From the IMG/VR virus record IMGVR_UViG_3300022935_000005, positions 216,914-280,913 of that record: a DNA stretch of 64,000 nucleotides; one strand, 5' to 3'. Position 1 is the first letter of the stretch. Every line of letters starts with the position of its first letter. The position numbers were made by a program, and so were the translations under genes. The notes below the pieces were generated by a model. The model did no database searches, was not told the origin of the DNA, and saw only the letters and a list, made by a program, of their open reading frames with translations. Positions 7,891 through 64,000 of this stretch are shown piece by piece.

Positions 7891-7954
7891 TGAACAAGCA
7901 CGGTTATTTTCTTATACTTGTTATGGCTTAAGCCGCAAGCAAAAGGAGAAAAAC

Positions 7955-21215: not shown

Positions 21216-21385
21216 AGCCGTGGACTTCCGTTAACTTTGCGCGGAGTCCATTATATTTAAAAGCATGGTGGGATTGCATGGTCTGAGCCCACCGTAAAAT
21301 AAAATGAGACTGGACATAAGCACTTGCCTACGCATCCTGTTGAGCCCAGTCAGATTTTCGATGATTTAGACTTAGGAGTTCCAGA

Positions 21386-21613
21386 ATGAAAATCACAAAG
21401 AACCAACTTAGAAGAATTATCCGGGAAGAGCGCGCTAAGCTTGCACGTGGCAGAGCTGTTAACGAACAGTACTCACCGGGTCCCGAGGAGCGCCGCGCAC
21501 GGTCCGCGATCGACCAGATTGTCACAGACTTTCTAGAGAGCGATGAGGGTGATCCGGCGTTAATTGCAGAGATTCTGAGAGAGATTGCCAACGACGTCGA
21601 CGAAGAAATGTAG
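21386..21613 (+). CDS. MKITK-leader protein 1
   Basis: MKITKNQLRRIIREERAKLARGRAVNE. Confidence 0.8.
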   Translation: MKITKNQLRRIIREERAKLARGRAVNEQYSPGPEERRARSAIDQIVTDFLESDEGDPALIAEILREIANDVDEEM

Positions 21614-21628
21614 TGGTCTGGGGGCGGC

Positions 21629-22165
21629 ATGAGAATCACAAAGAGACAACTTAGAAGAATTATCCGAGAAGCGATTGATGTTGTTGATAGAGACACTGGC
21701 GAAGTTATGCGCTTTTCTGATGATAGTAGCGACAGCATGGCAGATCTTCCTGAAAAAGCCTGGCCTGACCTGGTAAAGCGGCTTGGGTTGAGCCCTAAAG
21801 ACGTGGGTCTTGATGCTGCCGGTAATCAAGGATTTGAGCTAGACCAGAATGAGTTTATACGCCTTGACAACGAGACTCGTGAAAAAGCCTACAACCGTAA
21901 GATGAAAAAACAGGCAGCTGCCTACAAGGCTGATCGGGAAAGATTGGATATCGACAATCTCCTCGAGAGACTCCGCTATTGGGCACAAGACGCAGCGTCT
22001 GATTACATGGCTGACAATCCAGACACCGACCTGCAGGATATCGCCTATGACCTTGCGGACGCTTGGCAATTCGCGTTCGAAGAAGATGAACGAGAAGAAC
22101 TGTTGTGGCACTTTGACGGTGACCTTAACGACCTTAAGATTTTCGCAGCGGAGAGTATGGGATGA
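21629..22165 (+). CDS. MKITK-leader protein 2
   Basis: MRITKRQLRRIIREA. Confidence 0.8.
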   Translation: MRITKRQLRRIIREAIDVVDRDTGEVMRFSDDSSDSMADLPEKAWPDLVKRLGLSPKDVGLDAAGNQGFELDQNEFIRLDNETREKAYNRKMKKQAAAYKADRERLDIDNLLERLRYWAQDAASDYMADNPDTDLQDIAYDLADAWQFAFEEDEREELLWHFDGDLNDLKIFAAESMG

Positions 22166-22458
22166 AAATCACAAAACGTCAACTACGAAGAATCATTAAG
22201 GAAGAGAAAGCTCGCATTTTGGCTGAGCAACAACTTGATCCTCAAGTTGCCGCCCAAGCTCTTGCGGAGCTAAAGAACGATGGGTGGTTTAGTATGATAC
22301 AAACAGCGGCTACTGACGCAGCTGGTGACCTTGAGCAGCTCAGTGATCAGGTTGATGTCAAGTTAATGGACGCCGGCCTGAACGAGCTTGCCGTAGATAT
22401 CAGAAGTGTTGTTGAGCTATTGGACAAGATTAGACAAGCAGCGTACGGTCAGAGGTAA
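22162..22458 (+). CDS. MKITK-leader protein 3
   Basis: MKITKRQLRRIIKEEKARILAE. Confidence 0.8.
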   Translation: MKITKRQLRRIIKEEKARILAEQQLDPQVAAQALAELKNDGWFSMIQTAATDAAGDLEQLSDQVDVKLMDAGLNELAVDIRSVVELLDKIRQAAYGQR

Positions 22459-22563
22459 CATGATGAAAAAAAAGCTAATGGAGCTGCAAAAGCTCGCTAG
22501 AGATATTCGCGTGAATGTCCAACCGACAGCTGAGCAATCAGCAAGCAAACGAGGGAGTTTCGA

Positions 22564-23019
22564 ATGAAAATTACAAAGACGCAACTAAGACAGATTGTTA
22601 GAGAAAGCGCAGCGATGGACGATGCTGTTTATGAGGCTGGCTACAAAGACGCGATGCAAGATCGCCCACATGGTGCTAATGCAGATATGCGTGATATGGA
22701 TCCAAGATCATATGACTACGGTTTCGATAAGGGTACCGCTGACCGCATGGACATGCAGCGACCGCTTGGAACCAGAGGGTTTTACGAAGGTAAGGTGAGA
22801 ATCAAAAAGAGCGACCTTCAAAGAATCGTCAAGGAAGAGCTTATGTCTGAAGTCCGGACCGACGCGGACCTTGAAATGGACGCTATGTGGGACGAACTGT
22901 TTCAGGCACTAAAGAACAAAAGCTTCGGACTTGACCACGGTCTAGAAAGAGATGAAATTTACATCATGACAGGTGCTGCTGAGGGCATCACGGTCAAGAT
23001 AATGCGAAGAGGTCGATAA
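22564..23019 (+). CDS. MKITK-leader protein 4, with an internal second leader
   Basis: MKITKTQLRQIVRES; internal VRIKKSDLQRIVKEELMSE. Confidence 0.8.
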   Translation: MKITKTQLRQIVRESAAMDDAVYEAGYKDAMQDRPHGANADMRDMDPRSYDYGFDKGTADRMDMQRPLGTRGFYEGKVRIKKSDLQRIVKEELMSEVRTDADLEMDAMWDELFQALKNKSFGLDHGLERDEIYIMTGAAEGITVKIMRRGR

Positions 23020-23246
23020 TGCGTATTGCAAAGTCAGAGCTTAGAAGAATTATTGCAGAAGAGAGAGCAAAGCTTCAAGAACAGCGCCGCGGCCCAAGCG
23101 AAGCGCAAATAGAAGACGCCGTCTCTGGGATCGAGTTTGAGTTAAACAGACTGTATGACCAAGGGATGGATAACGCTGGCTTGCACAAAGTGCTCGACCA
23201 GATTAAGATTGACATTGACCGTGGATTTGTAGGAGAGCCAAGATGA
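23019..23246 (+). CDS. MKITK-leader protein 5
   Basis: MRIAKSELRRIIAEERAKLQE. Confidence 0.8.
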   Translation: MRIAKSELRRIIAEERAKLQEQRRGPSEAQIEDAVSGIEFELNRLYDQGMDNAGLHKVLDQIKIDIDRGFVGEPR

Positions 23247-23503
23247 AAATCACAAAGAACCAATTACGAAGAATCATCAAAGAAGAGCGTGCTAAGCTGC
23301 TCAAAGAAGGTGGATATCGTCACCCGAAAACCGGTGAGGATCTGCTTCTTATGTTAAATGACGTCGTCGACAAACTCATGGACGCTGGTATGGATTTCTA
23401 CGAGCTTGCTGATGAACTTCGAGGTTTGGCTGATGATGTGGAAAACAGCCAGCCTGAAGAGTCTCCGAAATTTATCGACATGACAGATCCAAGGGAGTTG
23501 TAA
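23243..23503 (+). CDS. MKITK-leader protein 6
   Basis: MKITKNQLRRIIKEERAKLLKE. Confidence 0.8.
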   Translation: MKITKNQLRRIIKEERAKLLKEGGYRHPKTGEDLLLMLNDVVDKLMDAGMDFYELADELRGLADDVENSQPEESPKFIDMTDPREL

Positions 23504-23892
23504 TGAAAATCACGAAGAGCCAACTAAGAAGAATCATTAAGGAAGAGAAGGCGAAGCTGCTCAAAGAGTATGGCGCTATGAACATGGAAGCCCTGAGCCC
23601 GCTGGTTCAGTTTGGACAGGCGTATGTTGGTCTCGGCGATGCAGTTCAGTCACAGCTGATTGATCTTGTCAATGCACACATCGAAGGACGCATCGAAGAC
23701 GCAGTATATGAGATGAATCCAAATGCACTTGACATGGCGTTCCAGAGATTACAGCAACCCTTATCTGCTCTAGCAAGAGCAGGTAGCGAAGACGCCGAGG
23801 AAGTGATGGATGCCATGGAGGCAGCTGCTGAAATATTCGCAGAGGGCGACGCAGAAGTGGACGCCGATGCACGAGCTGCAGGAGATATATAA
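23503..23892 (+). CDS. MKITK-leader protein 7
   Basis: MKITKSQLRRIIKEEKAKLLKE. Confidence 0.8.
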   Translation: MKITKSQLRRIIKEEKAKLLKEYGAMNMEALSPLVQFGQAYVGLGDAVQSQLIDLVNAHIEGRIEDAVYEMNPNALDMAFQRLQQPLSALARAGSEDAEEVMDAMEAAAEIFAEGDAEVDADARAAGDI

Positions 23893-23893
23893 A

Positions 23894-24211
23894 ATGAAAA
23901 TCACAAAGAACCAACTTAGAAGAATTATCAAAGAAGAGAAGACAAAACTTCTCGTTGAGATGAACGCTGTGGCAGACGCCGAGCGCTCCCTGGGTTTGTA
24001 CGCTAACGCATCCACAGTCGACAAGCTGTCTAGCGCCCTACAAAGTCTTTTGATGGAAGTCGAAACAGGTGCGATTGAAGACGGTCTTGAAGAAGATGAA
24101 GCTGAAGACATGGCAGCGAACGCTGGACTCATGGCAGTCGCTAACGCATTCCAGTCAGTGGGTATGATTGCTGAATACGACGCACTATACAGATTACTAC
24201 AGCGGGGTTAA
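23894..24211 (+). CDS. MKITK-leader protein 8
   Basis: MKITKNQLRRIIKEEKTKLLVE; likely start is the ATG at 23894, not 23810. Confidence 0.8.
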   Translation: MKITKNQLRRIIKEEKTKLLVEMNAVADAERSLGLYANASTVDKLSSALQSLLMEVETGAIEDGLEEDEAEDMAANAGLMAVANAFQSVGMIAEYDALYRLLQRG

Positions 24212-24217
24212 GACAAG

Positions 24218-24511
24218 ATGAAAATCACAAAGAACCAACTGCGAAGAATTATCAAGGAAGAGAAAGCGAAGCTTATGAACGAGCAGTTCAATTTTGCTGC
24301 TGCCGATCAAGAGATGATTAAGTGCGCTACACAGATGGGAGCTCTATTGGCAGGCCGGCCTGACGTTGCCACGGCAGTCCGTGATGCTCTAGCTGCAGGT
24401 CCTTTTAAGAAGGGAGCCGAGGCTCTTTTTAAAGCGTATGAGTCTGCACAAGCTGCTGCCGACACAGAGTACATGAGCTTTGGTGCCGGATACGATGACG
24501 ACGATTTTTAG
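24218..24511 (+). CDS. MKITK-leader protein 9
   Basis: MKITKNQLRRIIKEEKAKLMNE. Confidence 0.8.
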   Translation: MKITKNQLRRIIKEEKAKLMNEQFNFAAADQEMIKCATQMGALLAGRPDVATAVRDALAAGPFKKGAEALFKAYESAQAAADTEYMSFGAGYDDDDF

Positions 24512-24526
24512 GACTAGGAGAACAAA

Positions 24527-24988
24527 ATGAAAATCACAAAAAGACAATTACTTAGAATAATCAGAGAAGAAAAGGCCCGCATCGCTGAGCAGACTGTAGG
24601 TGTTGAAGACGTTTCTCAGTCAGAGGATGCGTTCGGTGGTGGAGACGTCGAGGAGGAGATCTTTGTCGATGCAGATGCCGATTCTTTACTGAACCAGAAC
24701 GATGATCCCGGTGAGGTTACCGACATCGAGGTCATACCTGAGCGTGTACGTTTGAAGAGACACCTCCGCAAGATTGTGTCAGAAGTTGCTGGCGGTGGTG
24801 GAGCGCTTCCTCCCGTTGATGACCTCGCTACTAAGCTTGCTAGTGTTGGATCTGAAGAAGCTCTTGACTTTATCCAGCGTGTTCTTGCCGCTATGTCGCG
24901 TAAAGCTGGCGCCTCGGCGGCTCCCGCTGAAGATGCAGTGGTAGAACCACCGGCTCCAATGCCCCCGGTTCCTGACGAAGAAGTTTAA
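24527..24988 (+). CDS. MKITK-leader protein 10, with an internal leader-like segment
   Basis: MKITKRQLLRIIREEKARIAE; internal VRLKRHLRKIVSE. Confidence 0.8.
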   Translation: MKITKRQLLRIIREEKARIAEQTVGVEDVSQSEDAFGGGDVEEEIFVDADADSLLNQNDDPGEVTDIEVIPERVRLKRHLRKIVSEVAGGGGALPPVDDLATKLASVGSEEALDFIQRVLAAMSRKAGASAAPAEDAVVEPPAPMPPVPDEEV

Positions 24989-30369: not shown

Positions 30370-30461
30370 TGTGGTCCCTTATTTGTAACTATACAGAAGA
30401 GAGCTATTTGTGTTTACCTAACACTCAAAGGCGTATATTTATATCTGCAAGGAGTTTGACT

Positions 30462-30851
30462 ATGAAAATAACAGAAAGCAACATCAGAAAGATAATCAGA
30501 GAAGAGCTCTCCTCACTTATGGAGCAGGACGAGGCGAAGCCAAAGAAGCTCGATGATCTTGACTTTAAGTCTGATGACCGAATGGAGTATGAGAGATGGG
30601 CTCGTTCTGCTGGTCACGTTTCTCCTGAAGTCCAATCAACTCTAGTTTCGTATTTCTTAAACCAAAATCTACAGAATGCTCATGACTTGCACCAGAGGCT
30701 CTGTGACGAACTCGGTTTAGACCATGATGCAGTGATGGCGGCTATGGAAAACCGACTAGAAAAAGAAGAAGATCCAGCTGCAGAGGAATCTGCTCGAGAG
30801 CTCGATCTAGCACGCGTCGCAGAAGCAGTATCTGCAATCTCTAAGCTGTAA
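30462..30851 (+). CDS. MKITK-leader protein, dispersed member
   Basis: MKITESNIRKIIREELSSLME; ATATTTA at 30435 and AGGAG RBS. Confidence 0.75.
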   Translation: MKITESNIRKIIREELSSLMEQDEAKPKKLDDLDFKSDDRMEYERWARSAGHVSPEVQSTLVSYFLNQNLQNAHDLHQRLCDELGLDHDAVMAAMENRLEKEEDPAAEESARELDLARVAEAVSAISKL

Positions 30852-32864: not shown

Positions 32865-33218
32865 ATGAAGAACATTATTTTGACGCTGCTCGCCGGAGTT
32901 GCTATCTATGGTTTTGGTGGATTCATGGTCGGTTGCGGTGATGGTGAAGATGAGACTGTAGAGACTGGAACTGAAGCAGAGACTGATGCTGGAACTGAAG
33001 CAGAAGCAGAAGCAGAAGCTGGAACTGAAGCAGAAGCTGGAACTGAAGCAGAAGCTGGAACTGAAGCAGAAGCTGGAACTGAAGCAGAAGCTGGAACTGA
33101 AGCAGAAGCTGGATCTGAGACTGAGACTGATGCTGGAGCGGAAGCTGGGGCTGGGGCAGACGCCGGCGTTGAAGAAGACGAAGATGCAGGCGCCGACCCT
33201 GAAGAATCTCAGGACTAA
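32865..33218 (+). CDS. Acidic low-complexity lipoprotein with (AGTEAE)n repeats
   Basis: Signal ending VGC, AGGAGG RBS, E/A/G/T-rich body. Confidence 0.7.
   Translation: MKNIILTLLAGVAIYGFGGFMVGCGDGEDETVETGTEAETDAGTEAEAEAEAGTEAEAGTEAEAGTEAEAGTEAEAGTEAEAGSETETDAGAEAGAGADAGVEEDEDAGADPEESQD
32988..33107 (+). repeat. 18-bp coding tandem repeat GCTGGAACTGAAGCAGAA
   Basis: Five perfect tandem units at 33018-33107 plus one at 32988-33005. Confidence 0.95.
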
Positions 33219-38875: not shown

Positions 38876-39814
38876 ATGTCATCAGTCAACCTTGGATATG
38901 CGTGTATCAACATGACGCTCCAGAAATCTCGCAAAGTTCAGTGCAATCGTGGCATGATCAAACGCACGTTTGCAGCAAAAGGCATCTCGTATGCTAGCGA
39001 GCTAGCTCTGAAGAATGTTACAGATCTTCGTGAAGTCATAAAGTGGAACAACGAAAACGGTGTCAGCGTTTATCGTATGACATCGTGCTTGTTTCCGTGG
39101 TTCTCAGAATATGACATGTTCGATCTTCCAGACATTGATAAGATCGCAGAGGTTATGGCAGACGCTGGTAAGATCGCTATGGATGCCGGACAGCGGCTAA
39201 GCTTCCATCCTGGCCCCTTCAACTGTCTGGCTTCACCAAGCGAAAGTGTAGTTCTTAAGACCATCAAAGAGCTTAATGATCATGCCGCGCAGATGGACCT
39301 CATGGGTCTACCAGCCTCCCCCATGGCTAAGATTAATATCCATGTTGGTGGAGCATATGGTGAGCATGACAAAGCACTGGAGAGGTTCTGTAAGAACTTC
39401 GAACGTCTTGGTGAAACTACTCGAGCTCGGCTGACTGTGGAAAATGACGACAAGCCCGCCTTATATTCTACCAAGATGCTGGTTGAAGGTGTCTCGAATC
39501 GAGTTGGGGCTCCAGTAGTCTTCGACTCTCATCACCATGAGCTAGGCCCGCAGGATTTGGATTACCACGATGCGTTCCATCTTGCTCGTGAAACTTGGGA
39601 AAAGCGCAGTGCCAAGCAGCAGTGTCACCATTCAAACTCTCGTAAGAACTACGAAGACCCTACCGCGAACGCAGTAGCGCACTCTGACTGGTACTATACT
39701 CCTTTCGAGAGCTTTGGTAAGCAGGTAGATGTTGTTCTAGAATGTAAGAAGAAAGAAGTTGCTCTATTCAAATACAGGAATGATTTCGTCGACAGTCTTC
39801 AAAAGGTGGCATAA
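38876..39814 (+). CDS. uvsE: UV DNA damage endonuclease
   Basis: LGYACIN, YRMTS.LFP, RLSFHPGPF.CLASP, INIHVGG, LTVENDDK, VFDSHHH, HSD. Confidence 0.92.
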   Translation: MSSVNLGYACINMTLQKSRKVQCNRGMIKRTFAAKGISYASELALKNVTDLREVIKWNNENGVSVYRMTSCLFPWFSEYDMFDLPDIDKIAEVMADAGKIAMDAGQRLSFHPGPFNCLASPSESVVLKTIKELNDHAAQMDLMGLPASPMAKINIHVGGAYGEHDKALERFCKNFERLGETTRARLTVENDDKPALYSTKMLVEGVSNRVGAPVVFDSHHHELGPQDLDYHDAFHLARETWEKRSAKQQCHHSNSRKNYEDPTANAVAHSDWYYTPFESFGKQVDVVLECKKKEVALFKYRNDFVDSLQKVA

Positions 39815-41746: not shown

Positions 41747-41972
41747 AAAGCGCCATATGGCTAAGGCTTTAAGCTGGCGGGCTGTCGGTACACTAGACAC
41801 AATGCTTGTGAGCTGGATAGTGACCGGCGATGCGTTGGTGGGATTATCAATAGGCCTCTTCGAAATAGTTTCAAAAACAGCTCTTTATTATTTTCACGAA
41901 AGAGTGTGGTATAGACTGTCTGACTTCGGTCTAGACAAAGAAAACACAGGGAAGGAAAACCAAACTAAATGA
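41736..41972 (+). CDS. DUF2061-like membrane protein
   Basis: KALSWRAVGTLDT...KTALYYFHERVW. Confidence 0.85.
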   Translation: MVSRKRHMAKALSWRAVGTLDTMLVSWIVTGDALVGLSIGLFEIVSKTALYYFHERVWYRLSDFGLDKENTGKENQTK

Positions 41973-42577
41973 AAGCAACGAACTTGCACTATCACTCAGA
42001 AACTGTGACGACAGAAGCGAAAGCTGCGAGAAATGGGCATAACCCATGCGTGATTTGGCTTACTGGACTGTCTGGTTCAGGAAAATCAACCATAGCCAAC
42101 GCCTTAGAGTCCACTTTATTTGGGATGGGTTTACAAACTCATCTTCTGGACGGTGATAACGTGAGGATGGGTCTAAACTCAGATCTGGGGTTTTCGCCTG
42201 AAGATAGGGCTGAAAACATCAGGCGGATCGGTGAAGTCGCAAACCTCTTCGCTCAAGCAGGTACAATCGTGATAACAGCATTTATATCTCCATATGAAAG
42301 CGACCGTTCGATTGCCAGAAGTGCAAGTAAACAAGACTTCCTTGAAGTGCACGTCCATGCAGATCTAGAAACTTGCGAATCTAGAGACCCAAAAGGATTG
42401 TATAAAAAAGCTCGGGCCGGGGTGATTAAAGGTTTTACAGGTATTGACGCTCCCTATGAAGCGCCGGACCTGGAGAGAGAGAACACTACTGTTGTTGACA
42501 CAAGTGTGTTGACAGTTCAAGAGTGTGTAGATTTAATAATCAAAGAATTAAGAGAGATGAAAGTGATTGGAGCATAA
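41969..42577 (+). CDS. cysC: Adenylyl-sulfate (APS) kinase
   Basis: WLTGLSGSGKST, LDGDNVR.GL..DLGFS..DR.ENIRR, FISPY, RDPKGLYKKA, FTGIDAPYEAP. Confidence 0.95.
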   Translation: MKATNLHYHSETVTTEAKAARNGHNPCVIWLTGLSGSGKSTIANALESTLFGMGLQTHLLDGDNVRMGLNSDLGFSPEDRAENIRRIGEVANLFAQAGTIVITAFISPYESDRSIARSASKQDFLEVHVHADLETCESRDPKGLYKKARAGVIKGFTGIDAPYEAPDLERENTTVVDTSVLTVQECVDLIIKELREMKVIGA

Positions 42578-52331: not shown

Positions 52332-54440
52332 ATGACCAACAGAAGACTAGCAGCTTCATTTTTCTTTCTTGCTGCTATCGGGTGCTCAGAAGATCAAGTC
52401 TCTCAGATGACCGTCGACTCTGGTGTAAGGACTATCACTCAAGATGACAGCAGTGCTGCAGATGTAATGATAGTCACAGTTCAAGACGCCTCTATAGATA
52501 TGTTCATTGATCCATGTCTCGACATCCAGAACACCGATGATATGTACTGTGAGTGTCACCCCAGATGCTGTCAAAATCAAACATGGTACTGCCCTCCTAG
52601 AGGTACTGAAGTTTTGGCAAAAGATGCTGTCTTAGACATCTGCGATACTGACTATGTACCGTGTGATAGAAACATTGATGAATCATGTCCTCCGGCAGAA
52701 ATTATCTACGAAAGTTCTTGTAACCATATGTTTGACTGTCCACCGGGCATAGACGAAGACTTTACAGTTTTCTATGATTGTGAGGTGGATGGTAACCCGG
52801 GCACTCAGAGGGTGCGTTGTGACAAGGGAAGGTTAGACTATGGACAGTGCGTCGTTTGTGTCTTGGCGGACGAGATCTGTGACGGCCAAGATAATGACTG
52901 CGATGGCGAAATAGACGAACACCAATTGAATGAATGTGGTCAATGTGGATTGTTACCCCAAGATGCTTGTGATGGGCTCGATAACGACTGCGATGGTCTT
53001 GTTGATGAAGATCTGGTTCAAGCATGTGTCACTACATGTGAGCGTGGTGTAGAGGTTTGTGAAAACGGAGCCTGGGTGGGTTGTACAGCAAGACAGCCAT
53101 CCGAAGAAATCTGCGACGGCTTCGATAATGACTGCGACGGTTTGATTGATGAAGAGCTTAATTGCGGATGCCCACCTGAGATGGTCGGCGCGTTGCTACC
53201 CTGTATGGAACCACCACTAACTTGTGGGATGGGATTCAAGACGTGCGAGTGTGAAGATGAAGACTGCTTGACAACTCGAATGTCTGACTGCTTCGCTTTG
53301 TGCGCTTGGTTACCGGCAGAGATAGTCCAGCATGATGAGCCAGACACTTGTGACAGATACGCAGGAATGCCTGTTAATCCAGAAGTTTGTAATAACTTCG
53401 ACGAAGACTGTGACGGTTTAATCGATGAGAGACTAAACAAGCCTTGCTATTCTGGTCCTCAAGATACTATAGGGGTAGGTGTGTGTCGAGGTGGTAGTCA
53501 AGTCTGCGAACAAGGTCGCTGGTACGGAGAAACAACAGCCGGCAGTTTTGTTCACGATTTTTGTGCAGGTGAGATCGTACCCAGCAGAGAGATTTGCGAC
53601 GGTAGTGATAATGACTGCGATGGTGTTACCGACTTTGGTCGAGAGATTCCAGACACAGACATTCTTTTCATTCTTGATTGGTCTGGATCTATGGCATACC
53701 AGATCAACGCTGTAAAGATGGCGATGAATAGATTTGCAAACCATTTCGCTGCAGAGGGTAAGTTAAAATGGGGATTAATAACCGGACCTCGGATTTTTCC
53801 AAGAGAAGGTCAAGATCCTTCACAGGCTAAACAATACCTGAGGTTAGAAACTGACATAACATCATTCTCAGATTTTATCGCTGCATTCTCTGCAGCTGGT
53901 GCTTTTGAGACTGGAGCAACCCATGAAATGTTAATTGACGCGCTGCTGCTTTCTGTCGCGACTATTTCATCTAACATGACTTATGACCTGTCAACCGCAC
54001 AGTGGTTCAATGGTTTCTCTGACGCCGGATCGATTCCGAGTCTACAAGACTTTCGAATAAACTGGCGACATAACGCTGACAGGGTTATCGTAGTGTTTAC
54101 AGACGAGGAGGATCAGTCTTTCCTCGTACCGAAAGTGACTAGCGAACAAGCTATAGCAGCCCTCGAGGGATCACCAGATACTACACTTTATGTGTTCACA
54201 CAAAGATACTTTTTTTCGAGGTGGGACGATTATGTAGACCCGACAGGTGGAAGACTGTTCCCATTATCTTCTAACTCTGAGCAGATGTATGATGATCTCA
54301 TGTCTATACTCGATGAGATCTGCCTTAACGCAGGCTCTTCTGTACAGATGGAAGAAGCTTCGTATAATGGTAATATGTCAAGCCAGCTATACAATCCAGT
54401 GATTTCAAGATATAATTTTTCTGGTGGCTATTGCTACTAA
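52332..54440 (+). CDS. Cys-rich lipoprotein with repeated E.CDG.DNDCDG..DE (putative metal-binding/MopE-like) motifs and C-terminal VWA domain
   Basis: Lipobox AAIGC; five CD/NxxDxDCDG units; DILFILDWSGSM, VIVVFTDEEDQS. Confidence 0.85.
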   Translation: MTNRRLAASFFFLAAIGCSEDQVSQMTVDSGVRTITQDDSSAADVMIVTVQDASIDMFIDPCLDIQNTDDMYCECHPRCCQNQTWYCPPRGTEVLAKDAVLDICDTDYVPCDRNIDESCPPAEIIYESSCNHMFDCPPGIDEDFTVFYDCEVDGNPGTQRVRCDKGRLDYGQCVVCVLADEICDGQDNDCDGEIDEHQLNECGQCGLLPQDACDGLDNDCDGLVDEDLVQACVTTCERGVEVCENGAWVGCTARQPSEEICDGFDNDCDGLIDEELNCGCPPEMVGALLPCMEPPLTCGMGFKTCECEDEDCLTTRMSDCFALCAWLPAEIVQHDEPDTCDRYAGMPVNPEVCNNFDEDCDGLIDERLNKPCYSGPQDTIGVGVCRGGSQVCEQGRWYGETTAGSFVHDFCAGEIVPSREICDGSDNDCDGVTDFGREIPDTDILFILDWSGSMAYQINAVKMAMNRFANHFAAEGKLKWGLITGPRIFPREGQDPSQAKQYLRLETDITSFSDFIAAFSAAGAFETGATHEMLIDALLLSVATISSNMTYDLSTAQWFNGFSDAGSIPSLQDFRINWRHNADRVIVVFTDEEDQSFLVPKVTSEQAIAALEGSPDTTLYVFTQRYFFSRWDDYVDPTGGRLFPLSSNSEQMYDDLMSILDEICLNAGSSVQMEEASYNGNMSSQLYNPVISRYNFSGGYCY

Positions 54441-57443: not shown

Positions 57444-58179
57444 AGTAATACTCCCGGGAGTGGAATGGAAACAGTATCATTCACGATCAAGTTCGGAGAC
57501 ACTTCCGACCCCCACCAGCTTGCACGGCAGATCGCTGAGGAGCTAGACCTTCGAAGTTGGAGGGTCAAGGAATCTGACTCATCCTCTGAGGATGAGGGTA
57601 TCGCTGCCACAAAATACATTATCCAAGGATGGAGCACCGAATGGTGAAAGAAGAGGTAAGGGACATCGTTATCGCTACCACCGTTAACGCTATCACCGTT
57701 GGCGCAGGTATCTTACTCGGGTACACCATGTATCCTATTATCGTCGAGTTTATGAAGTGATACATCTCATTGGTGACATCGTCCGGTTTGTGGGGTCTAG
57801 TGCTGATGAGATGTACATGATTATCGACAGAGCATATCCCGGCGATGATGAGGAGTGGGAGTGGGAGTGGGTCTTGATGAACTTTCACGGTGGACATATC
57901 ATTTATTGTGCTGATGAAGAGATCACCCTCGTCTCAGAGGGTGAAGAGTGAAAGTGGGTGACTTGGTAAGAGTTCAGTATCCGGATGATGATACTTGGTA
58001 TTCGGGTTTTCTAGTCGAGGTTGCTCACGACGACGATCCGATGTCAACCTATCAGATGTATTGTGTTGAGCGTGAAGCTCTTCATATTCTAAGTCCGGGC
58101 CGCGATCTAATCGAGGTGATTAGTGAAGAATAGATGCCACCAGCAGTGTAAAACAGCATACTTAAGATTAGAATAGAAT

Positions 58180-58626: not shown

Positions 58627-59037
58627 GCTCCCAACCCACTTCACAAACAACAACTACATTTTTCAAGGAGTCTTATGACTAGATTTTTTGCTCTCATCGG
58701 AATTATAAGACGCCGGTCATAGTGCTGTGACCTTCCTTTTGGGGACTCTTTGCAGAAGTCTATTCATTTACATATCGTGGTACTTGTTTAGCGCTATAGC
58801 TTGGATGGTTTTACAATGAAAGTTGGTGATCTGGTCGAGGTTTACGACGTCTGTAACGGTTGGTCTCTCGGCGTAATCGTTGAGATCAACGCACGACCCA
58901 CCGGGTCAGACTTTATCAAGGTGTTTAGGGACGGTGCAGTTGAAGCAACGACTTCGCTGTGGTGTCGAGATCCCATAACGCAAAAGCGACACCGTTACGG
59001 AACTGAGACTTGAAAAGAGACTTCATAACAGCGGGAG

Positions 59038-59283: not shown

Positions 59284-59464
59284 ATTTTCTTCCGAATGAA
59301 GAGTTCTGGAATCTCGACTCAATCCCGGGTGAGTACTTGAACAACCTCCTCACCTGAGTTATGATTTGATGAACAAAGATTGAAATCTTCTAGAAAGACG
59401 GGATATTTTATATTAAAGAACCAGAGCTATAAGATAATTAAATTAGATAGAGGATGGAAACACT

Positions 59465-60616
59465 ATGACTTATGCACAAGAGCTTCTCATAAAGGAGCAC
59501 ATAGAATTATTTGAAACCCGTGTTCAGTTGAGAAAACCCATGCATCATATCCCTATGGTGTACACTGTCCAGGAAGGAGTTGTTGACGACGCGCTTGAAG
59601 CTCTGGCAACGGCAGGTGAAGGTGCGATTCTAAATATCGTCCAATGGGCAGTAGCAGGCGCCGCTGAATACGGATTGGTCGCAACTGGTGCCGGAGCTCC
59701 AGCTGCACCCTTCGCAGAAACCTTAATTGATGTAGGGTTCACTGCGGGTGACCTTGCTAGTGCAACCTCTTCAATGGCATCTATTCAAACGAATTTCTCA
59801 GAATTCTCGAAAATGATAGGTGACGCAATAGAAAGTTATGGTGAAAGCTGGTCTGCTTTCTACAAAAAGGTTCGAAAAATCATCCGTGAAGGCTTGAGAG
59901 CTCTTGGTAAAGGCGCGACAGGAAAAGTAGATGAGCTAGCGGAGAAACTAAAAAAGGGACTCAAGAATATCCTCAAGAAGTTGAACCGTACAATTGGCAA
60001 CCTCATTCAGGCTATTATACCAGATGCGACTATAGGGGCAACAGTTGCTACCGCGATTGAAACCTTACTGACTGGATTGACACAAAGTCCTTTCAGCGCT
60101 GTCACAAGTACCATGGGTAAAATACCAGTAGTCAAAGATCTCATTCTTGAACCTGCTAAGTTTGTACAATTCTTCAAAGACGGGTTTCAGTCACTTATCA
60201 AAGGCATCATTGCATTAGGTAAGAAAATTGATGCAGGCGGTTTCATGGAAAAAGCTGCACTGGCTACCGTGAGTCCAATCCTTGGAGCTCTCGCCGCTGC
60301 CGGCGCTGTGGGCAAAGGACTCGAGTGGATTGCTAAGAATGTCATCGAGCCAGTTATTGAACCGGCGACGAAAGTGATCACACAAATCCTCGAAGTTGTA
60401 ATGCCTACCGTGATGTCACTCCTCGCAGTATATCAGATACTAGTAAAAGGTGAATACAAAGAGCAAAAAGTTACAAGCGAAAGCAGAAAGCTGCGCGCCT
60501 CTGACATTGAGTTTGCTTACGTTGACAACCTGATAGAGCAAAGGGTCAAATTGTATGAGCAGGCAAAAATCGATTTGTCGCTAAACACAAAAAGTCTCTC
60601 TGCTTTTATTGCGTAA
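59465..60616 (+). CDS. Ala/Gly-rich helical hypothetical protein with hydrophobic hairpins
   Basis: AVAGAAEYGLVATGAGAPAAP, ALATVSPILGALAAAGAVG; long amphipathic helices. Confidence 0.6.
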   Translation: MTYAQELLIKEHIELFETRVQLRKPMHHIPMVYTVQEGVVDDALEALATAGEGAILNIVQWAVAGAAEYGLVATGAGAPAAPFAETLIDVGFTAGDLASATSSMASIQTNFSEFSKMIGDAIESYGESWSAFYKKVRKIIREGLRALGKGATGKVDELAEKLKKGLKNILKKLNRTIGNLIQAIIPDATIGATVATAIETLLTGLTQSPFSAVTSTMGKIPVVKDLILEPAKFVQFFKDGFQSLIKGIIALGKKIDAGGFMEKAALATVSPILGALAAAGAVGKGLEWIAKNVIEPVIEPATKVITQILEVVMPTVMSLLAVYQILVKGEYKEQKVTSESRKLRASDIEFAYVDNLIEQRVKLYEQAKIDLSLNTKSLSAFIA

Positions 60617-60698
60617 AGAGTGAAAGTCGGTGAAACCTCACAAAGCACCGCACAAAGCACCTTGAACAACGCTCTCACCTGAGTTACAATAATTCAAC

Positions 60699-60814
60699 AG
60701 GAGTGAGGCGGTATTACGCAGGGTTCTACTGAGACAATAAACGACCCGGGCCGAGGAATAAGAGTCTAACAAAGGAATACTCGGTCACTTGCAGGTGAGA
60801 ACCCTGCCACTCCT
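60699..60814 (+). ncRNA. Structured RNA motif A, copy 1
   Basis: AGGAGTG/CACTCCT, GCAGGGTTCT/AGAACCCTGC and GGCCGAG/CTCGGTC stems; TTGAAC-N17-TACAAT promoter directly upstream and T-run downstream; second copy at 63189. Confidence 0.75.
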
Positions 60815-60877
60815 TCTTTTTTGGTATATCTATATGCTGCGCTCGATATATTTATCTTTACGATCTGGAGGACAATA

Positions 60878-61156
60878 ATGAAAATCACAAAAAGACAGCT
60901 TAGAGGGATTATCAGAGAAGCTATGCAGCCCGGCGGAATGGCTGTACGTTTGCAAACAAATAAGCTGGTGAAAGCGGGTCTTGCAGATTTTTCAGGACCT
61001 ATCGAGTACAAGAGTCCACAAAATTTTGTCATTAGAGACGTAGAGAAATCCAAAGTGCCTGAATTCATTAGCTGGATCGAGGAAATCGATTCAATGATGC
61101 GCCATGAAGAACCAGGATCCGCGCCTCACTTGGTAGACTTGCATTACGGAGTGTAG
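60878..61156 (+). CDS. MKITK-leader protein, dispersed member
   Basis: MKITKRQLRGIIREA; ATATTTA at 60848 and GGAGG RBS. Confidence 0.75.
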   Translation: MKITKRQLRGIIREAMQPGGMAVRLQTNKLVKAGLADFSGPIEYKSPQNFVIRDVEKSKVPEFISWIEEIDSMMRHEEPGSAPHLVDLHYGV

Positions 61157-61157
61157 A

Positions 61158-61382
61158 ATGAAAATCACAAAGCGACAACTAAGAAGAATTATTAGAGAAG
61201 CTACTGTATCCCCTAAGTTACCCAATCCAGATCCTCACTATGAAGATGGATGGAATGACGCTATTGTGTACGGTGAACCTAGACAAACTCCCACTCATCC
61301 ACCCAAAGCCGTTGATGCGTATTGGGACGGTTATCAAGATGGTGAAGATCATGCACGAAGGTCCGAAGAGCCTCTTCATTAA
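61158..61382 (+). CDS. MKITK-leader protein, dispersed member
   Basis: MKITKRQLRRIIREA; body Y.DGW.D...Y.DGY.DG. Confidence 0.75.
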   Translation: MKITKRQLRRIIREATVSPKLPNPDPHYEDGWNDAIVYGEPRQTPTHPPKAVDAYWDGYQDGEDHARRSEEPLH

Positions 61383-61444
61383 ACAAACCTCTCCAAAAAC
61401 ACTCCTCTCTTGTAAATACATCTACTCCCATAATACAATTCTAT

Positions 61445-61513
61445 AAATGAAGTTACCCCGATCGTAGCGGGTGGGACTGGAAACAGTCAGTTAGGTGGTC
61501 TGGTTGCCTAACA
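61445..61513 (+). ncRNA. Structured RNA motif B, copy 1
   Basis: ACCCCG/CGGGT, GACTG-GAAA-CAGTC and GTTAGG/CCTAAC hairpins plus T-run; TTGTAA-N18-TACAAT upstream. Confidence 0.7.
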
Positions 61514-61597
61514 TTTTTAATTTAGTTGCTTTTTATGAGCAAAACGCCCACTCGGAGTAGGCACTATGACACATAAAAGTAACTTGCGGAGAAGAGA

Positions 61598-62182
61598 ATG
61601 ACTGACGAAATCAAAGAACTCAAAAAGCAAGTAGAAGAACTCAAAAAAGAGAATACAGAGCTACAACGAGAGTTATCAGTTCATAATTTTCTTGATACTG
61701 GCGTTCCACAGGAGCGACTTGATTATCAGCGAGAGTTAAAAAAAGAACTAAACGAATTTCGTTATCTCTACGGAAGTGTTCTTTCTCGCATAAACAAGTT
61801 GGAAGACGACACAAGAGCAGCGATAGAGTTTGCCGACCTCGCAGAAGACGATAGGGGAACTGAAATGATCTTGAAGTTCTGCGACGACATTACAAAGTTG
61901 GTTGGAGAATAAAGAATGAAAAGCAACCACTCTTATAATGCTGGTTATCACAGAGGACTAAACACAGAATACCACGATGTTCCTATTGAAGAACTCTTTG
62001 CTAAATGGATTGCCGATGTTCGCAGACCAGCATCAGCAGAAGCATTTGACCCTGTTGCTTTTGAGAAAGGTTATAACGACGGCAAAGACGACTATCTATG
62101 CGGTGGCAACACACCAGAAAGAGTTGAAGAACAGATAGAGTGGTTGAAGAAACTTGCGGAGAAAGAAAATGAACAACATTGA
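61598..62182 (+). CDS. Two hypothetical ORFs (61598-61912 coiled coil; 61916-62182)
   Basis: A-rich ORFs with GGAG RBSs. Confidence 0.55.
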
Positions 62183-62747
62183 GGACATTAAAAACAAATG
62201 GGAGAACACAAGGCTCCTAGAAGAACTACCAGAAGACGAGCAATATTCTATGAGTCAATTGTTAGAAAATGAAGCAAGACATATTCTATCTACTTACCAA
62301 GATGTAAATGAAAGTCAATTAGCATACATTTGTTTTCCTTTAATTCGCAGGATATTCCAATCATCAGGTTTTTTTGAAGAAGGTGATTGCCCACTCACTT
62401 TCACATACGAAACAAGTGTTCTTCCCGCATTTACCTACTTCAAGCCAGACGAAGAAGAAGCAAGTGTTGCAATAACTCAGGTTTATGATTTTGAATCCTC
62501 GCCAAACAAAGAAGTGGTTGAGGAAATTTGCTCCAATAGGTATTATGCTCTGGATGCGGAAGTTGGACTAACAGCAGAACTCGCTGAAAGATTCAGAAAC
62601 GAACTTAACGAGAAACACAAAGGAAAACATCTTATTTTTGGAGATCCAATTATGATGAGAGAAGAAGACGGCGAAAGGATTTATTCTTATCGTTGTGCGG
62701 TTTTACCGGGAGGTTCAAGATTACACGAAGGAGGATATAAAGAATGA
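62169..62747 (+). CDS. Protein resembling the N-terminal part of a T4 gp23-type major capsid protein (truncated paralog)
   Basis: KWENTRLLEEL...MSQLLENEARHIL...FPLIRRIF. Confidence 0.6.
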   Translation: MNNIEDIKNKWENTRLLEELPEDEQYSMSQLLENEARHILSTYQDVNESQLAYICFPLIRRIFQSSGFFEEGDCPLTFTYETSVLPAFTYFKPDEEEASVAITQVYDFESSPNKEVVEEICSNRYYALDAEVGLTAELAERFRNELNEKHKGKHLIFGDPIMMREEDGERIYSYRCAVLPGGSRLHEGGYKE

Positions 62748-63180
62748 ACAACATTGAGATTCTATATCAAGAATGCAAAGTGTGTGGAAAAACATTCAAA
62801 CTTCCAACTCGTAAAGAACTGGAAAAATCAATTTTATTCAAGGCTGCCGAGGCTCTCGGAATTGATATGGGAAATGGTTATACAGGCGGGAATAGTTTAT
62901 TGGCGATGTTGAACTGTTCTGTTGAGTGTGCGAGAAAACTGGAGAGCGAAGAGTGAAAGTCGGTGATCTGGTAAAAGCAAAGCACAAATACTCTAAAAAC
63001 GAAGTAGGGATTGGGATAGTACTCAAAGTAGAAGAAAACTTCTACAAAACCTATAATGATTACTTTGAAGACCGATTGACTATTCACTGGGCACACGGGG
63101 AGACAACTTTGGAACCAGATAGTTATGTTGAGAAAATAAGTGGAACAAAATGTCAACATTTGCTCCCAGATGGAGTATAA
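62744..63180 (+). CDS. Zn-finger ORF (62744-62956) and KVGDLV barrel ORF (62953-63180)
   Basis: CKVC...CSVEC; MKVGDLVKAKHK. Confidence 0.6.
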
Positions 63181-63188
63181 TTGTAACA

Positions 63189-63308
63189 AATAGAGTGAGG
63201 CGGTATTACGCAGGGTTCTACTGAGATGATATACGACCCGGACCAAGGAATAAGAGTCTTAAAAGGGAATACTTGGTCGCTTGCAGGTAAAAATCCTGCC
63301 ACTCTATT
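63189..63308 (+). ncRNA. Structured RNA motif A, copy 2
   Basis: AATAGAGTG/CACTCTATT and GACCAAG/CTTGGTC stems, compensatory relative to copy 1; TATAAT at 63176-63181. Confidence 0.75.
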
Positions 63309-63311
63309 ATA

Positions 63312-63422
63312 AAATGAAGTTACCCCGATTGTAAGGATGAAGCGGGAGAGGGATAAACTCCATGATTGCTAATCTGCGGGTGGGACTGGAAACAGTCAGT
63401 TAGGTGGTCTGGTTGCCTAACA
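63312..63422 (+). ncRNA. Structured RNA motif B, copy 2, with a 42-nt insertion
   Basis: Nearly identical to copy 1 except insert 63334-63375 in the first hairpin loop. Confidence 0.7.
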
Positions 63423-63443
63423 CCTTTTTAGGGAGAGCGAAGA

Positions 63444-63533
63444 ATGAAAGTCGGTGATCTGGTAAAAGCAAATCACAAAATCGGCGCGGCTAATATCAAA
63501 AAACGCTACAAGATGACGAGCGGTCAAGCTTAA
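63444..63533 (+). pseudogene. Truncated copy of the 62953 gene start
   Basis: 41-bp near-identity 62941-62981 vs 63432-63472 (one mismatch at the start codon), then divergence and a stop after 29 aa. Confidence 0.6.
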
Positions 63534-64000
63534 AGGAAGAGACAGCGCCACTATAACGAGAGACGCATCATCTACTATAAGAACATACACCTCAGCTCAC
63601 ACTCACGATCACGCTTCTGTTATACAAGAATAGAGTAGTATATCAGCGCTCTCTGCTCTCTGTCTCCCAGCTCTCTGCCCACTCTAACACCAAAAAACAC
63701 TCACTAACACCCATTAACACCCATTTACACTCGGGTATCCCTCTTGGGTCGTGACAGGTGGCTATTCCTCCATGTGTCCTGGCTCGTAGGGGGCAGTTTT
63801 TCTGTTGCTCCCTCTGGTCACATTCCACGAGGAGTTATTTCTGTGTTGAGATTTTTTCTCTCGGCTAAGTACATATACGAGCCGATGTACACAAGTAAAT
63901 GAGTTTAATAGAAAAAAAGTAGATTTACACGAATTTCATGTGCGAATACAAAACTTTTACAATTCTCTTCGAGAACCCGCGTTTCCAACTGTTCTCGCGT

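What the first reader, a model, noticed from the sequence alone, without database searches (positions are those of the whole stretch)
60699..63308. Structured RNA motif A: two promoter-driven copies with compensatory base changes
Seen: two copies of about 115 nt (60699-60814 and 63189-63308). The closing stems differ in sequence but both pair (AGGAGTG/CACTCCT vs AATAGAGTG/CACTCTATT). The inner stem covaries (GGCCGAG/CTCGGTC vs GACCAAG/CTTGGTC). A GCAGGGTTCT/AGAACCCTGC stem is largely kept. Unpaired segments are invariant (AGGCGGTATTAC bulge, GACCCGG, GGAATAAGAGTC, GGAATAC), and an AGAC/GTCT pseudoknot is possible. Each copy starts 8-10 nt after a -10 box. Inference: a functional ncRNA whose conserved single-stranded residues suggest a ribozyme, ligand-binding RNA or protein decoy. 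I do not recognise the family.
Basis: partly seen in the sequence, partly recalled or inferred. Interest (0 to 1): 0.85.

Follow-up and report, generated by a model that had tools for sequence, protein, structure and literature searches.

The report
Phage tRNA-like RNA with giant loops
The two repeats are genes for a previously uncatalogued small RNA of uncultured marine giant phages. It is built on the cloverleaf of a long-variable-arm tRNA but cannot decode, and in related phages it sits among tRNA genes or inside the phage's own tmRNA.

Summary
Both copies are real (60699-60815 and 63191-63307, + strand), and each starts 7-9 nt after a sigma-70-like -10 box. I collected 60 distinct full-length homologues, all from uncultured marine, estuarine and salt-marsh viral contigs. 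None came from 185,579 reference bacterial and archaeal genomes, cultured phages or Rfam 15.

The fold is a tRNA cloverleaf. It has a 7-bp acceptor stem, 2 nt, a 3-bp D stem, 1 nt, and a 5-bp 'anticodon' stem with a 17-nt loop. A 7-bp 'variable arm' carries a conserved 24-nt loop. The T arm (G53-C61, U54 and A58 kept) abuts the acceptor 3' strand. Thirteen stem pairs covary. The AGAY/RUCU loop-loop pairing has one covarying pair and remains only suggestive.

After trimming the two expanded loops in silico, ARAGORN of 60 copies class II tRNAs. A covariance model of the motif scores phage T4 tRNA-Ser, tRNA-Leu and T4 species 1 RNA best. In relatives the element lies in tRNA arrays, just downstream of phage tmRNA genes, or nested inside intact tmRNAs.

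My best reading is a stable tRNA mimic whose ends are made by tRNA-maturation enzymes and whose invariant body binds an unknown partner. The identity is well supported. The function is inferred.

The parts
60662..60690 (+). Promoter of copy 1 (-35 TTGAAC, 17-nt spacer, -10 TACAAT). The same promoter type recurs at 59337-59365 ahead of a 383-aa gene.
   Evidence: family D10. The same promoter sequence precedes the motif in L015 and L061.
60699..60815 (+). Copy 1, whole tRNA-like RNA. Acceptor 60699-60705 / 60808-60814. D arm 60708-60719. 'Anticodon' arm 60721-60747 (17-nt loop 60726-60742). 'Variable' arm 60749-60786 (24-nt loop 60756-60779). T arm 60791-60807. Discriminator-like U at 60815.
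   Evidence: Covariance model hit at 142.6 bits; pair counts; RNAalifold; ARAGORN on trimmed sequences.
60732..60735 (+). Copy 1, AGAC in the anticodon-loop expansion: 5' half of the possible loop-loop pairing.
   Evidence: helix 4; the partner is 60764-60767.
60764..60767 (+). Copy 1, GTCT in the variable-arm loop: 3' half of the possible loop-loop pairing.
   Evidence: C-G 28, U-G 20, U-A 11, other 1; one search was inconclusive.
60817..60822 (+). Run of six T directly after copy 1. A hairpin and two small MKITKRQLR... genes follow (60878-61156 and 61158-61382).
   Evidence: The same arrangement occurs in 7 distinct related contexts (class 'Trun').
63153..63181 (+). Promoter of copy 2 (-35 TCAACA, 17-nt spacer, -10 TATAAT).
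63191..63307 (+). Copy 2, whole tRNA-like RNA. Acceptor 63191-63197 / 63300-63306 (extendable by 2 bp, to 63189 on the 5' side and to 63308 on the 3' side). D arm 63200-63211. 'Anticodon' arm 63213-63239. 'Variable' arm 63241-63278. T arm 63283-63299. Possible loop-loop pairing 63224-63227 with 63256-63259.
   Evidence: Covariance model hit at 146.6 bits.
63311..63430 (+). Companion element 'motif B', long form, directly 3' of copy 2. It comprises AAATGAAGTTACC, a helix with a 43-nt insert, GGTGGG, a GAAA hairpin and an intrinsic terminator (stem 63399-63421).
   Evidence: D8; B follows the motif in 45 of 79 distinct contexts. The same AAATGGNTACC helix flanks the motif inside tmRNAs.
61445..61518 (+). 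Motif B, short form. It follows the two small genes after copy 1, has its own promoter-like site (61410-61439), and ends in a terminator (stem 61490-61512).
   Evidence: (D8).

Best explanation
Each copy is a gene for a roughly 117-nt RNA descended from, or closely modelled on, a class II (long-variable-arm) tRNA. It keeps the acceptor stem and T arm. These form the coaxial 12-bp helix that RNase P, the 3' tRNA-trimming nucleases and the CCA-adding enzyme recognise (established tRNA biology). It has lost what a decoding tRNA needs: the anticodon loop is 17 nt, the D loop has no GG, and T-loop positions 55 and 56 are free to vary. Two expansions were added, about 10 nt in the anticodon loop and about 20 nt in the variable loop. 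They are highly conserved and may pair with each other. Shown: the fold, selection on the stems, the phage-only distribution, the promoters, and placement among or inside tRNA and tmRNA genes on the same strand. Inferred: the RNA is transcribed from its own promoter, starting at the acceptor stem, or is cut out of tRNA or tmRNA co-transcripts by the host's tRNA-maturation enzymes. It then accumulates as a stable RNA and acts in trans as a tRNA mimic. Its invariant lower body (30 invariant nt at the 5' side plus the variable-arm loop with two GGAAUA repeats) would bind a conserved protein or RNA partner. I think that partner is most likely a tRNA-handling or tRNA-targeting factor, or the trans-translation machinery. 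[quoted passage not shown]
For: Fold and selection: 98.8% of cells are paired and 14 pairs show double changes, with 0 of 500 shuffles reaching this and slid controls at 2-6 pairs. RNAalifold predicts the same cloverleaf de novo. Acceptor and variable-stem columns changed 3-8 times each on a tree. tRNA likeness: the spacing is 7/2/3/1/5/.../5/7, and G53-C61, U54 and A58 are invariant or nearly so. Some copies have a canonical GGTTCAAATCC T arm. ARAGORN of 60 copies class II tRNAs once the two loops are trimmed, against 0 of 60 untrimmed. ARAGORN in intron mode uses the same acceptor, D and T arms. The motif's covariance model aligns end to end with real tRNAs: L026 tRNA-Pro at 19 bits, L112 tRNA-Leu at 19 bits, T4 tRNA-Ser at 26 bits (E 2e-6) and T4 tRNA-Leu at 18 bits. 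Context: the element is 11 nt before tRNA-Leu in L105 and 37 nt before tRNA-Gln in L097. It lies inside tRNA arrays in L062 and L114, and is followed within about 20 nt by a tRNA-Met-like sequence in L049 (read by eye). It is about 80 nt after tmRNAs in six loci and nested in four distinct Rfam-confirmed tmRNAs (L064, L071, L088, L108). It is on the same strand as the tRNA or tmRNA in 25 of 25 loci. In most promoter-bearing contexts the -10 box ends 5-8 nt (up to 13 nt) before the acceptor stem, across several unrelated promoter sequences. Distribution: about 110 viral or metagenomic loci, 0 true hits in reference genomes and 0 in cultured phages.
Against: There are no transcript data, so expression, processing, CCA addition and stability are all inferred. 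The D and anticodon stems never vary, so covariation is silent on them. Neither Rfam's tRNA model nor default ARAGORN recognises the native sequence. No partner has been identified. The window holds no Ro/TROVE protein, RNA ligase, CCA-adding enzyme or tmRNA. The two window copies have no tRNA neighbours, and copy 1 could equally be read as a 5' leader of two small genes.
Confidence: 0.55

Rival explanations
1. The element is purely a cis-acting processing signal ('tRNA punctuation'). It exists only to recruit RNase P and 3' nucleases, so that flanking RNAs (motif B, tmRNA halves, small-gene mRNAs) get defined ends. The excised cloverleaf itself has no function.
For: The element always abuts another RNA or gene: B in 45 of 79 contexts, plus tRNAs, tmRNA parts and small genes. 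Permuted tmRNAs are known to be cut by tRNA-processing enzymes (PMC11915505, read).
Against: A processing signal needs only the acceptor and T-arm helix. Here the most conserved parts are elsewhere: 30 invariant nt in the D and anticodon region and the 24-nt variable loop. Many copies start at a promoter with nothing upstream to process.
Confidence: 0.15
2. The element is a selfish or decaying relic: a degenerate tRNA or tmRNA fragment spread by recombination among repeated small-gene cassettes, with no role for the phage.
For: There is a degenerate half copy (L095 10890-10990). L093 has a 5'-truncated tmRNA fused to the motif. L026 has a tRNA 5' fragment just upstream. AAATGRNG repeats lie on both sides of some copies.
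Against: Compensatory changes occur in three helices, and loops are invariant across 60 distinct sequences from many environments. The two window copies differ by 12% yet both keep every pair. Independent strong promoters were acquired repeatedly.
Confidence: 0.08
3. This is the first reader's reading: a self-cleaving ribozyme or a ligand-binding (riboswitch-like) RNA.
For: The element has a multi-helix junction with invariant single-stranded segments and a possible pseudoknot. Copy 1 and six related contexts lie upstream of small genes with a T-run in between.
Against: No Rfam ribozyme or riboswitch family matches at E<=10. Downstream content is not constant: it can be B, tRNAs, tmRNA or unrelated genes. 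The architecture is explained by tRNA descent.
Confidence: 0.07
4. The element is a working decoder tRNA with an unusual anticodon loop, for example for recoding or frameshifting.
For: The first seven loop nucleotides (CUACUGA) have U33 and a purine at position 37. A rare short variant has an 8-nt loop (L006 and L076). ARAGORN labels the trimmed forms tRNA-Ser(ACU).
Against: The loop is 17 nt in 60 of the 62 distinct full-length copies. There is no G18G19 and no conserved positions 55-56. There is no sign of stop-codon reassignment in the window: all three stops are used, and reading any one as sense gives similar, strand-unspecific gains.
Confidence: 0.05

Closest known systems
Class II tRNAs (tRNA-Ser and tRNA-Leu type, long variable arm)
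   Same: The cloverleaf spacing is identical, and the 7-bp acceptor stem is stacked on a 5-bp T stem. G53-C61, U54 and A58 are kept, and a base-paired variable arm emerges after the anticodon stem. The motif's own covariance model scores T4 tRNA-Ser and tRNA-Leu best. ARAGORN accepts the trimmed forms.
   Different: The anticodon loop is 17 nt instead of 7, and the variable loop is 24 nt instead of 3-5. The D loop is 6 nt without GG, position 8 is A, and positions 55 and 56 are variable. No CCA is encoded in most copies. Neither Rfam's tRNA model nor default ARAGORN detects it.
Phage T4 species 1 RNA (rnaC), a stable RNA of unknown function at the end of the T4 tRNA cluster
   Same: Both are phage-encoded RNAs of roughly 120-140 nt sitting with tRNA genes. 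The 3' part of rnaC is a tRNA-like domain with a long extra arm and a canonical T arm, and it is the third-best hit of the motif's model in the T4 region (16 bits, E 0.002).
   Different: The score is no better than for ordinary class II tRNAs, and none of the invariant loop sequences is shared. rnaC has a 47-nt 5' extension. T4 rnaD does not match at all. This is an analogy, and homology beyond common tRNA ancestry is not shown.
tmRNA gene forms (standard, group I intron-interrupted, circularly permuted two-piece)
   Same: The element is physically nested in otherwise intact phage tmRNAs with a tag such as ANNNNYELALAA, in a helix after the second pseudoknot. Permuted tmRNAs are matured by tRNA-processing enzymes, and one has a tRNA gene in its intervening sequence (PMC11915505).
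   Different: The element is not the tmRNA's own tRNA-like domain. It has no G3-U70 (G-C in 57 of 60) and no tag frame, and the insertion is in the pseudoknot region, not the T loop. A tRNA-like insertion at that site is not among the gene forms described in that database paper.
Bacterial Y RNA YrlA (tRNA-like module bound to Ro/Rsr; also reported in phages)
   Same: Both are non-decoding tRNA mimics within a bacterial or phage non-coding RNA. Jumbo phages can carry Ro/TROVE with a tRNA-like partner (PMC7824862).
   Different: In YrlA the RNA ends form the Ro-binding stem in place of the anticodon stem (from my own knowledge of the family). Here the ends form the acceptor stem. There is no Rfam match and no TROVE gene in the window.

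Membership tests
tRNA (Rfam RF00005 / ARAGORN) | 7-bp acceptor stem abutting a 5-bp T stem with a 7-nt T loop; G53-C61, U54 and A58 | tested here: met
   both stems covary, G53-C61 and A58 are invariant, and U54 is above 90%.
tRNA (Rfam RF00005 / ARAGORN) | 7-nt anticodon loop presenting a triplet | tested here: not met
   The loop is 17 nt in 60 of the 62 distinct full-length copies, and 8 nt in L006 and L076.
tRNA (Rfam RF00005 / ARAGORN) | D loop G18G19 pairing with T loop positions 55 and 56 (elbow) | tested here: not met
   The D loop is an invariant GUAUUA. T-loop positions 55 and 56 vary (GA, GG, UC, UU, AA, GC).
tRNA (Rfam RF00005 / ARAGORN) | Recognised by tRNA detectors | tested here: not met
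   Rfam finds nothing at gathering score or at E<=10. Default ARAGORN finds 0. Detection occurs only after in-silico trimming of both loops (54 of 60) or in intron mode (5 of 62).
tmRNA (RF00023) | tRNA-like domain with G3-U70, a tag reading frame and pseudoknots | tested here: not met
   There is no tmRNA hit in the window. Pair 3-70 is G-C in 57 of 60. ARAGORN's 'tag' inside the motif is not conserved between copies. The motif is a guest inside some tmRNAs.
Known ribozyme and riboswitch families (Rfam 15) | Match to a curated covariance model | tested here: not met
   Searches gave 0 matches, even at E<=10 over 60300-64000.
Group I intron (considered because AGAC/GUCU recalled the P7 pairing) | P3-P8 core order, guanosine-binding P7, flanking exons that rejoin | tested here: not met
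   The helix order does not fit (the 3' partner lies inside a hairpin loop). There is no Rfam Intron_gpI hit. No tRNA 3' half lies downstream in L026.
T4 species 1 / species 2 RNAs | Specific sequence or structure similarity beyond generic tRNA likeness | tested here: not met
   rnaC scores 16 bits, below T4 tRNA-Ser (26) and tRNA-Leu (18). rnaD does not match.
YrlA / bacterial Y RNA | Ro-binding terminal stem plus tRNA-like module; adjacent rsr gene | tested here: not met
   There is no Rfam hit and no TROVE domain among the 40 window ORFs scanned. The rest of the 281-kb genome was not available.

The most novel reading that the evidence does not exclude
The element is a trans-acting tRNA mimic that marine jumbo phages use against a host tRNA-directed process, either an anticodon- or acceptor-targeting defence nuclease or trans-translation. 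Its nesting in phage tmRNAs would define a fourth tmRNA gene form, in which host tRNA-processing enzymes excise the cloverleaf and leave a non-permuted two-piece tmRNA.
Probability: 0.15. Interest if true: 0.85.

Novelty: new variant of a known kind. Interest (0 to 1): 0.65.

Why it matters
Phage tRNA genes are now seen as weapons in the contest with host tRNA-cleaving defences, yet tRNA-like RNAs that cannot decode, such as T4 species 1 RNA, have had no assigned function for fifty years. This family offers a second, much better-sampled example. It has a clear division into a generic part (acceptor and T arm) and an invariant specialised part, which makes a partner hunt feasible. It also shows a tRNA-shaped insert in the pseudoknot region of otherwise intact tmRNAs. 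That arrangement is not among the described tmRNA gene forms, and it could reveal how two-piece tmRNAs arise. On the practical side, tRNA and Rfam scans miss the element, so it is currently unannotated in more than a hundred viral contigs.

Tried and rejected
1. Rfam at gathering score and at E<=10 gave nothing.
2. I compared the sequence by eye with the group I intron P7 pairing and the hammerhead core. The helix order and core residues do not fit.
3. A small ORF reading does not hold. The 28-aa ORF at 63226-63312 has no start in copy 1, and substitutions are compensatory rather than synonymous.
4. Cultured phages (INPHARED) gave no DNA or protein match for the region, for a 515-aa neighbour or for a related phage tmRNA, so host and taxon remain unknown.
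5. Reference genomes gave 0 hits with the 27-nt core. The 5 hits with the loop pattern were all chance, matching the model only locally.
6. Three further viral-contig patterns on other parts of the motif found no new loci. The family as sampled is therefore shallow and its 5' 30 nt are invariant.
7. Origin from tRNA-Pro: the L026 tRNA-Pro shares 6 of 7 acceptor pairs and the D stem with the motif. The L097 pair of sequences shows no such link, so I treat this as a coincidence.
8. The tree-aware test of the pseudoknot pair was underpowered.
9. The stop-codon recoding scan was negative.
11. I tried to check whether the motif is one of the 8,495 IMG/VR candidates of PMC10690425, but no supplement text is held.
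12. The two GGAAUA repeats in the variable loop resemble CsrA or anti-Shine-Dalgarno binding sites. This is a recollection only and was not tested.
Full report
**Observation.** The window holds two + strand copies of a roughly 117-nt element. They are 88% identical without gaps over 112 nt. The 19-nt core GAGGCGGTATTACGCAGGG occurs exactly twice, against 0.00 expected. Each copy is preceded by a sigma-70-like promoter whose -10 box ends 8 or 9 nt before the first paired base. Folded alone, each copy gives the same multi-branched structure on the + strand, with z-scores of -2.1 and -2.8. Rfam 15 has no match, either at gathering scores over the whole window or at E<=10 over 60300-64000. ARAGORN finds no tRNA or tmRNA in the window.

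**Relatives.** The window is the last 64 kb of a 280,913-bp viral contig (IMGVR_UViG_3300022935_000005).
- A 17-nt core pattern found 27 true homologues in IMG/VR.
- Three patterns on other parts of the motif found nothing new.
- A degenerate pattern found 86 more stretches in marine, estuarine and salt-marsh metagenomes.
- There are no true matches in 185,579 reference genomes and none in 50,697 cultured phage records.
- Sixty distinct full-length sequences were aligned (A3 and A4).

**Structure.** RNAalifold, run de novo, and my manual assignment agree. In order, the fold has:
- a 7-bp closing stem;
- two unpaired nucleotides;
- a 3-bp hairpin (GCG/CGC);
- one nucleotide;
- a 5-bp stem with a 17-nt loop;
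- one nucleotide;
- a 7-bp stem with a 24-nt loop;
- four nucleotides;
- a 5-bp stem with a 7-nt loop, which runs directly into the 3' strand of the closing stem.

Overall, 98.8% of cells are paired and 14 pairs carry changes on both sides: closing stem 5, 7-bp stem 5, 3' hairpin 3, loop-loop pairing 1. No shuffle out of 500 reaches this, and slid controls give 2-6 pairs. On a tree, the covarying columns of the closing and 7-bp stems changed 3-8 times each. The 3' hairpin rests on about three independent events (with the alignment).

It is broken in exactly those sequences where the 3' hairpin has switched from GCAGG/CCTGC to GTGGG/CCCAC, so I reject it.

Three of its four pairs are invariant. 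The fourth is C-G in 28 sequences, U-G in 20, U-A in 11 and mismatched in 1. A tree-aware sign test had too few independent contrasts to decide, so it stays suggestive.

**Identity.** The spacing 7/2/stem/1/5-loop-5/arm/5-7-5/7 is that of a tRNA with a long variable arm.
- The last hairpin is a T arm. The pair equivalent to G53-C61 is invariant, A58 is invariant and U54 is nearly so. Several relatives carry a canonical GGTTCAAATCC.
- ARAGORN in intron mode calls five copies a tRNA using the same acceptor, D and T arms.
- I removed 10 nt from the 17-nt loop and 20 nt from the 24-nt loop in silico. Default ARAGORN then called 54 of 60 sequences a class II tRNA with exactly my arm assignment. It called 0 of 60 when either loop was left intact.
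- A covariance model built from the family (R1) aligns end to end, weakly but significantly, with real tRNAs in related loci: tRNA-Pro at 19.1 bits and tRNA-Leu at 18.9 bits.
- In the phage T4 tRNA region its best hits are tRNA-Ser (26.1 bits, E 2e-6) and tRNA-Leu (18.4 bits). The third is the tRNA-like 3' domain of species 1 RNA, rnaC (16.0 bits, E 0.002).

The element is nevertheless not a decoding tRNA. The anticodon loop is 17 nt, the D loop (GUAUUA) lacks the GG that forms the elbow, T-loop positions 55 and 56 vary freely, and position 8 is A. The window shows no stop-codon reassignment that would call for an odd suppressor.

**Context.** In 79 distinct flank contexts:
- 45 are followed within a few nucleotides by a second conserved element, motif B. 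In the window it lies at 63311-63430, and as a separate unit at 61445-61518.
- 7 are followed by a T-run and small genes, as in copy 1.
- 18 are followed by something else.
- 9 are cut by contig ends.

Among the 'something else' are tRNA genes. The element is 11 nt before tRNA-Leu in L105 and 37 nt before tRNA-Gln in L097. It lies inside arrays in L062 and L114, and in L049 a tRNA-Met-like sequence starts about 20 nt downstream (read by eye). L026 has a tRNA 5' fragment immediately upstream.

ARAGORN and Rfam also show phage tmRNA genes. In six loci the element starts about 80 nt after a tmRNA. In four distinct tmRNAs (L064, L071, L088, L108; 84-108 bits against RF00023) it is nested inside the tmRNA. 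It replaces the tip of a helix that follows the second pseudoknot, while the tRNA-like ends and a normal tag (for example ANNNNYELALAA in L064) are intact. That enclosing helix covaries by eye: CUUGA/UCAAG, CCUA/UAGG and CUCG/CGAG.

The sequence AAATGGNTACC lies just 5' of the element in all four tmRNAs, whereas AAATGAAGTTACC lies just 3' of it in the free-standing units. The element and this helix therefore travel together in two permuted arrangements. L093 has a promoter, the element, and then only the 3' part of a tmRNA.

Wherever tRNA or tmRNA genes share a locus with the element, they are on the same strand (25 of 25 loci). Several unrelated promoter sequences are used. In most promoter-bearing contexts the -10 box ends 5-8 nt (up to 13 nt) before the acceptor stem, so transcription would start at or next to the first paired base.

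The protein genes next to the window copies have no Pfam or PHROG match. There is no reverse transcriptase, endonuclease, Ro/TROVE or RNA-repair gene nearby.

**Mechanism.**

*Shown:* this is a selected RNA fold of class II tRNA architecture. It is restricted to uncultured phages, promoter-driven or embedded in tRNA and tmRNA transcription units. Its acceptor and T-arm half is generic and free to covary. Its D and anticodon half and its variable loop are invariant in sequence.

*Inferred from established tRNA biology:* the acceptor/T-arm helix is the part recognised by RNase P, the 3' processing nucleases and the CCA-adding enzyme. That would give the RNA defined ends and stability in every context seen. 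The invariant half would then be the working surface, binding a conserved partner. This makes it a tRNA mimic acting in trans.

Processing of the nested copies would release the element and leave a two-piece tmRNA. This parallels what is known for permuted tmRNAs (PMC11915505).

I put 0.55 on this combined reading. About 0.85 of my belief is in the tRNA-derived identity, and considerably less is in the trans-acting decoy function. The rivals are a pure processing signal (0.15), a relic or selfish element (0.08), a ribozyme or riboswitch (0.07) and a decoding tRNA (0.05).

**Comparison with the known.** The element works like, and probably descends from, a class II tRNA, but it fails three defining tRNA features, so it is not filed as a tRNA.
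- The nearest functional analogue is T4 species 1 RNA, a stable tRNA-like RNA at the end of the T4 tRNA cluster. The similarity is no more than generic tRNA likeness.
- It is not a tmRNA, though it can be a guest in one. The tmRNA database paper describes three gene forms (standard, intron and permuted). A tRNA-like insert in the pseudoknot region is not among them.
- It is not a YrlA-type Y RNA by topology or by Rfam.
- A published catalogue of 8,495 IMG/VR structured-RNA candidates (PMC10690425) may already contain it. Its supplementary lists were not available to check.

**Verdict.** One helix was mis-assigned, and the family was unrecognised because tRNA finders are defeated by two loop expansions. 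It is a new variant of a known kind (phage tRNA-like RNA), with an unusual and testable link to tmRNA. Interest is 0.65.

Noticed in passing
window 61445-61518 and 63311-63430: Motif B is a second conserved RNA-like element. It comprises AAATGAAGTTACC, a helix, GGTGGG, a GAAA hairpin and an intrinsic terminator. The long form has a 43-nt insert in the first hairpin loop. Its first helix resembles the tmRNA helix that encloses motif A in related phages.
   Followed up: partly
L064 214-673; L071 375-850; L088 94-580 (-); L108 2371-2860 (-): These are intact phage tmRNAs with motif A nested in the pseudoknot region. ARAGORN mis-reads part of the insert as the tag (DPDRGIRV). The real tag in L064 reads ANNNNYELALAA.
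   Followed up: partly
L093 610-915: A promoter is followed by motif A and then only the 3' portion of a tmRNA (pseudoknot, T arm, acceptor 3' strand, CCA). No 5' acceptor strand is present anywhere in the 2.1-kb contig. This is either a truncated relic or one half of a split tmRNA.
   Followed up: partly
L097 5323-5438; L092 8818-8944 (also L098 1360-1486): Other long (116-127 nt) tRNA-like sequences with canonical T arms lie in the same phage tRNA clusters. ARAGORN did not call them, and they are unrelated in sequence to motif A.
   Followed up: no
L095 10890-10990 (-): This is a degenerate half copy of motif A, with the 3' half conserved and the 5' half replaced. It lies about 780 nt downstream of an intact copy.
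   Followed up: no
L006 249-344 (-), L076 1015-1117 (-), L103 5040-5135 (-): A short variant of motif A lacks 9 nt of the anticodon-loop expansion (8-nt loop) and has a different 3' end without an obvious T arm. One is on a contig labelled as a giant-virus MAG.
   Followed up: no
window 21376-24591, 30452-30518, 60868-60934, 61148-61214: At least 12 small paralogous genes start with MKITKxQLRRIIxEE, eight of them in a tandem block (repeat families D2 and D3). Two of them follow motif A copy 1. They have no Pfam or PHROG match.
   Followed up: partly
window 57936-57983, 58816-59013, 62953-63180, 63444-63533; also L026, L084, L093: A second small-gene family starts with (M/V)KVGDLVK. It repeatedly flanks motif A units in this and related phages.
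   Followed up: no
window 18075, 28019, 35848, 38478, 57407 (each about 43 nt): A repeated promoter-like element (GATAATCGTGCAA, about 17 nt, then TATAAT) occurs five times. A similar GATAAACAATGCA motif precedes motif A in L014 and L032. It may be a phage-specific promoter class.
   Followed up: no
window 10-1110, 2674-3234, 7826-8962, 12364-13119, 17136-18068, 20724-21215, 38876-39814, 41969-42577: The region is dense in auxiliary metabolic and repair genes for a phage: PEP carboxykinase (cut by the window start), thymidine kinase, an IMPDH/GMP-reductase-family protein, DnaJ, a sulfotransferase with APS kinase, a fatty-acid hydroxylase and the UV endonuclease UvdE.
   Followed up: partly
window 52332-54440 and 32930-33208: A 702-aa protein carries repeated CxDGxDNDCDG (MopE-like metal-binding) motifs. 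Separately, there is an 18-nt tandem coding repeat of 12 overlapping registers, rich in GAA, GCA and ACT codons.
   Followed up: no
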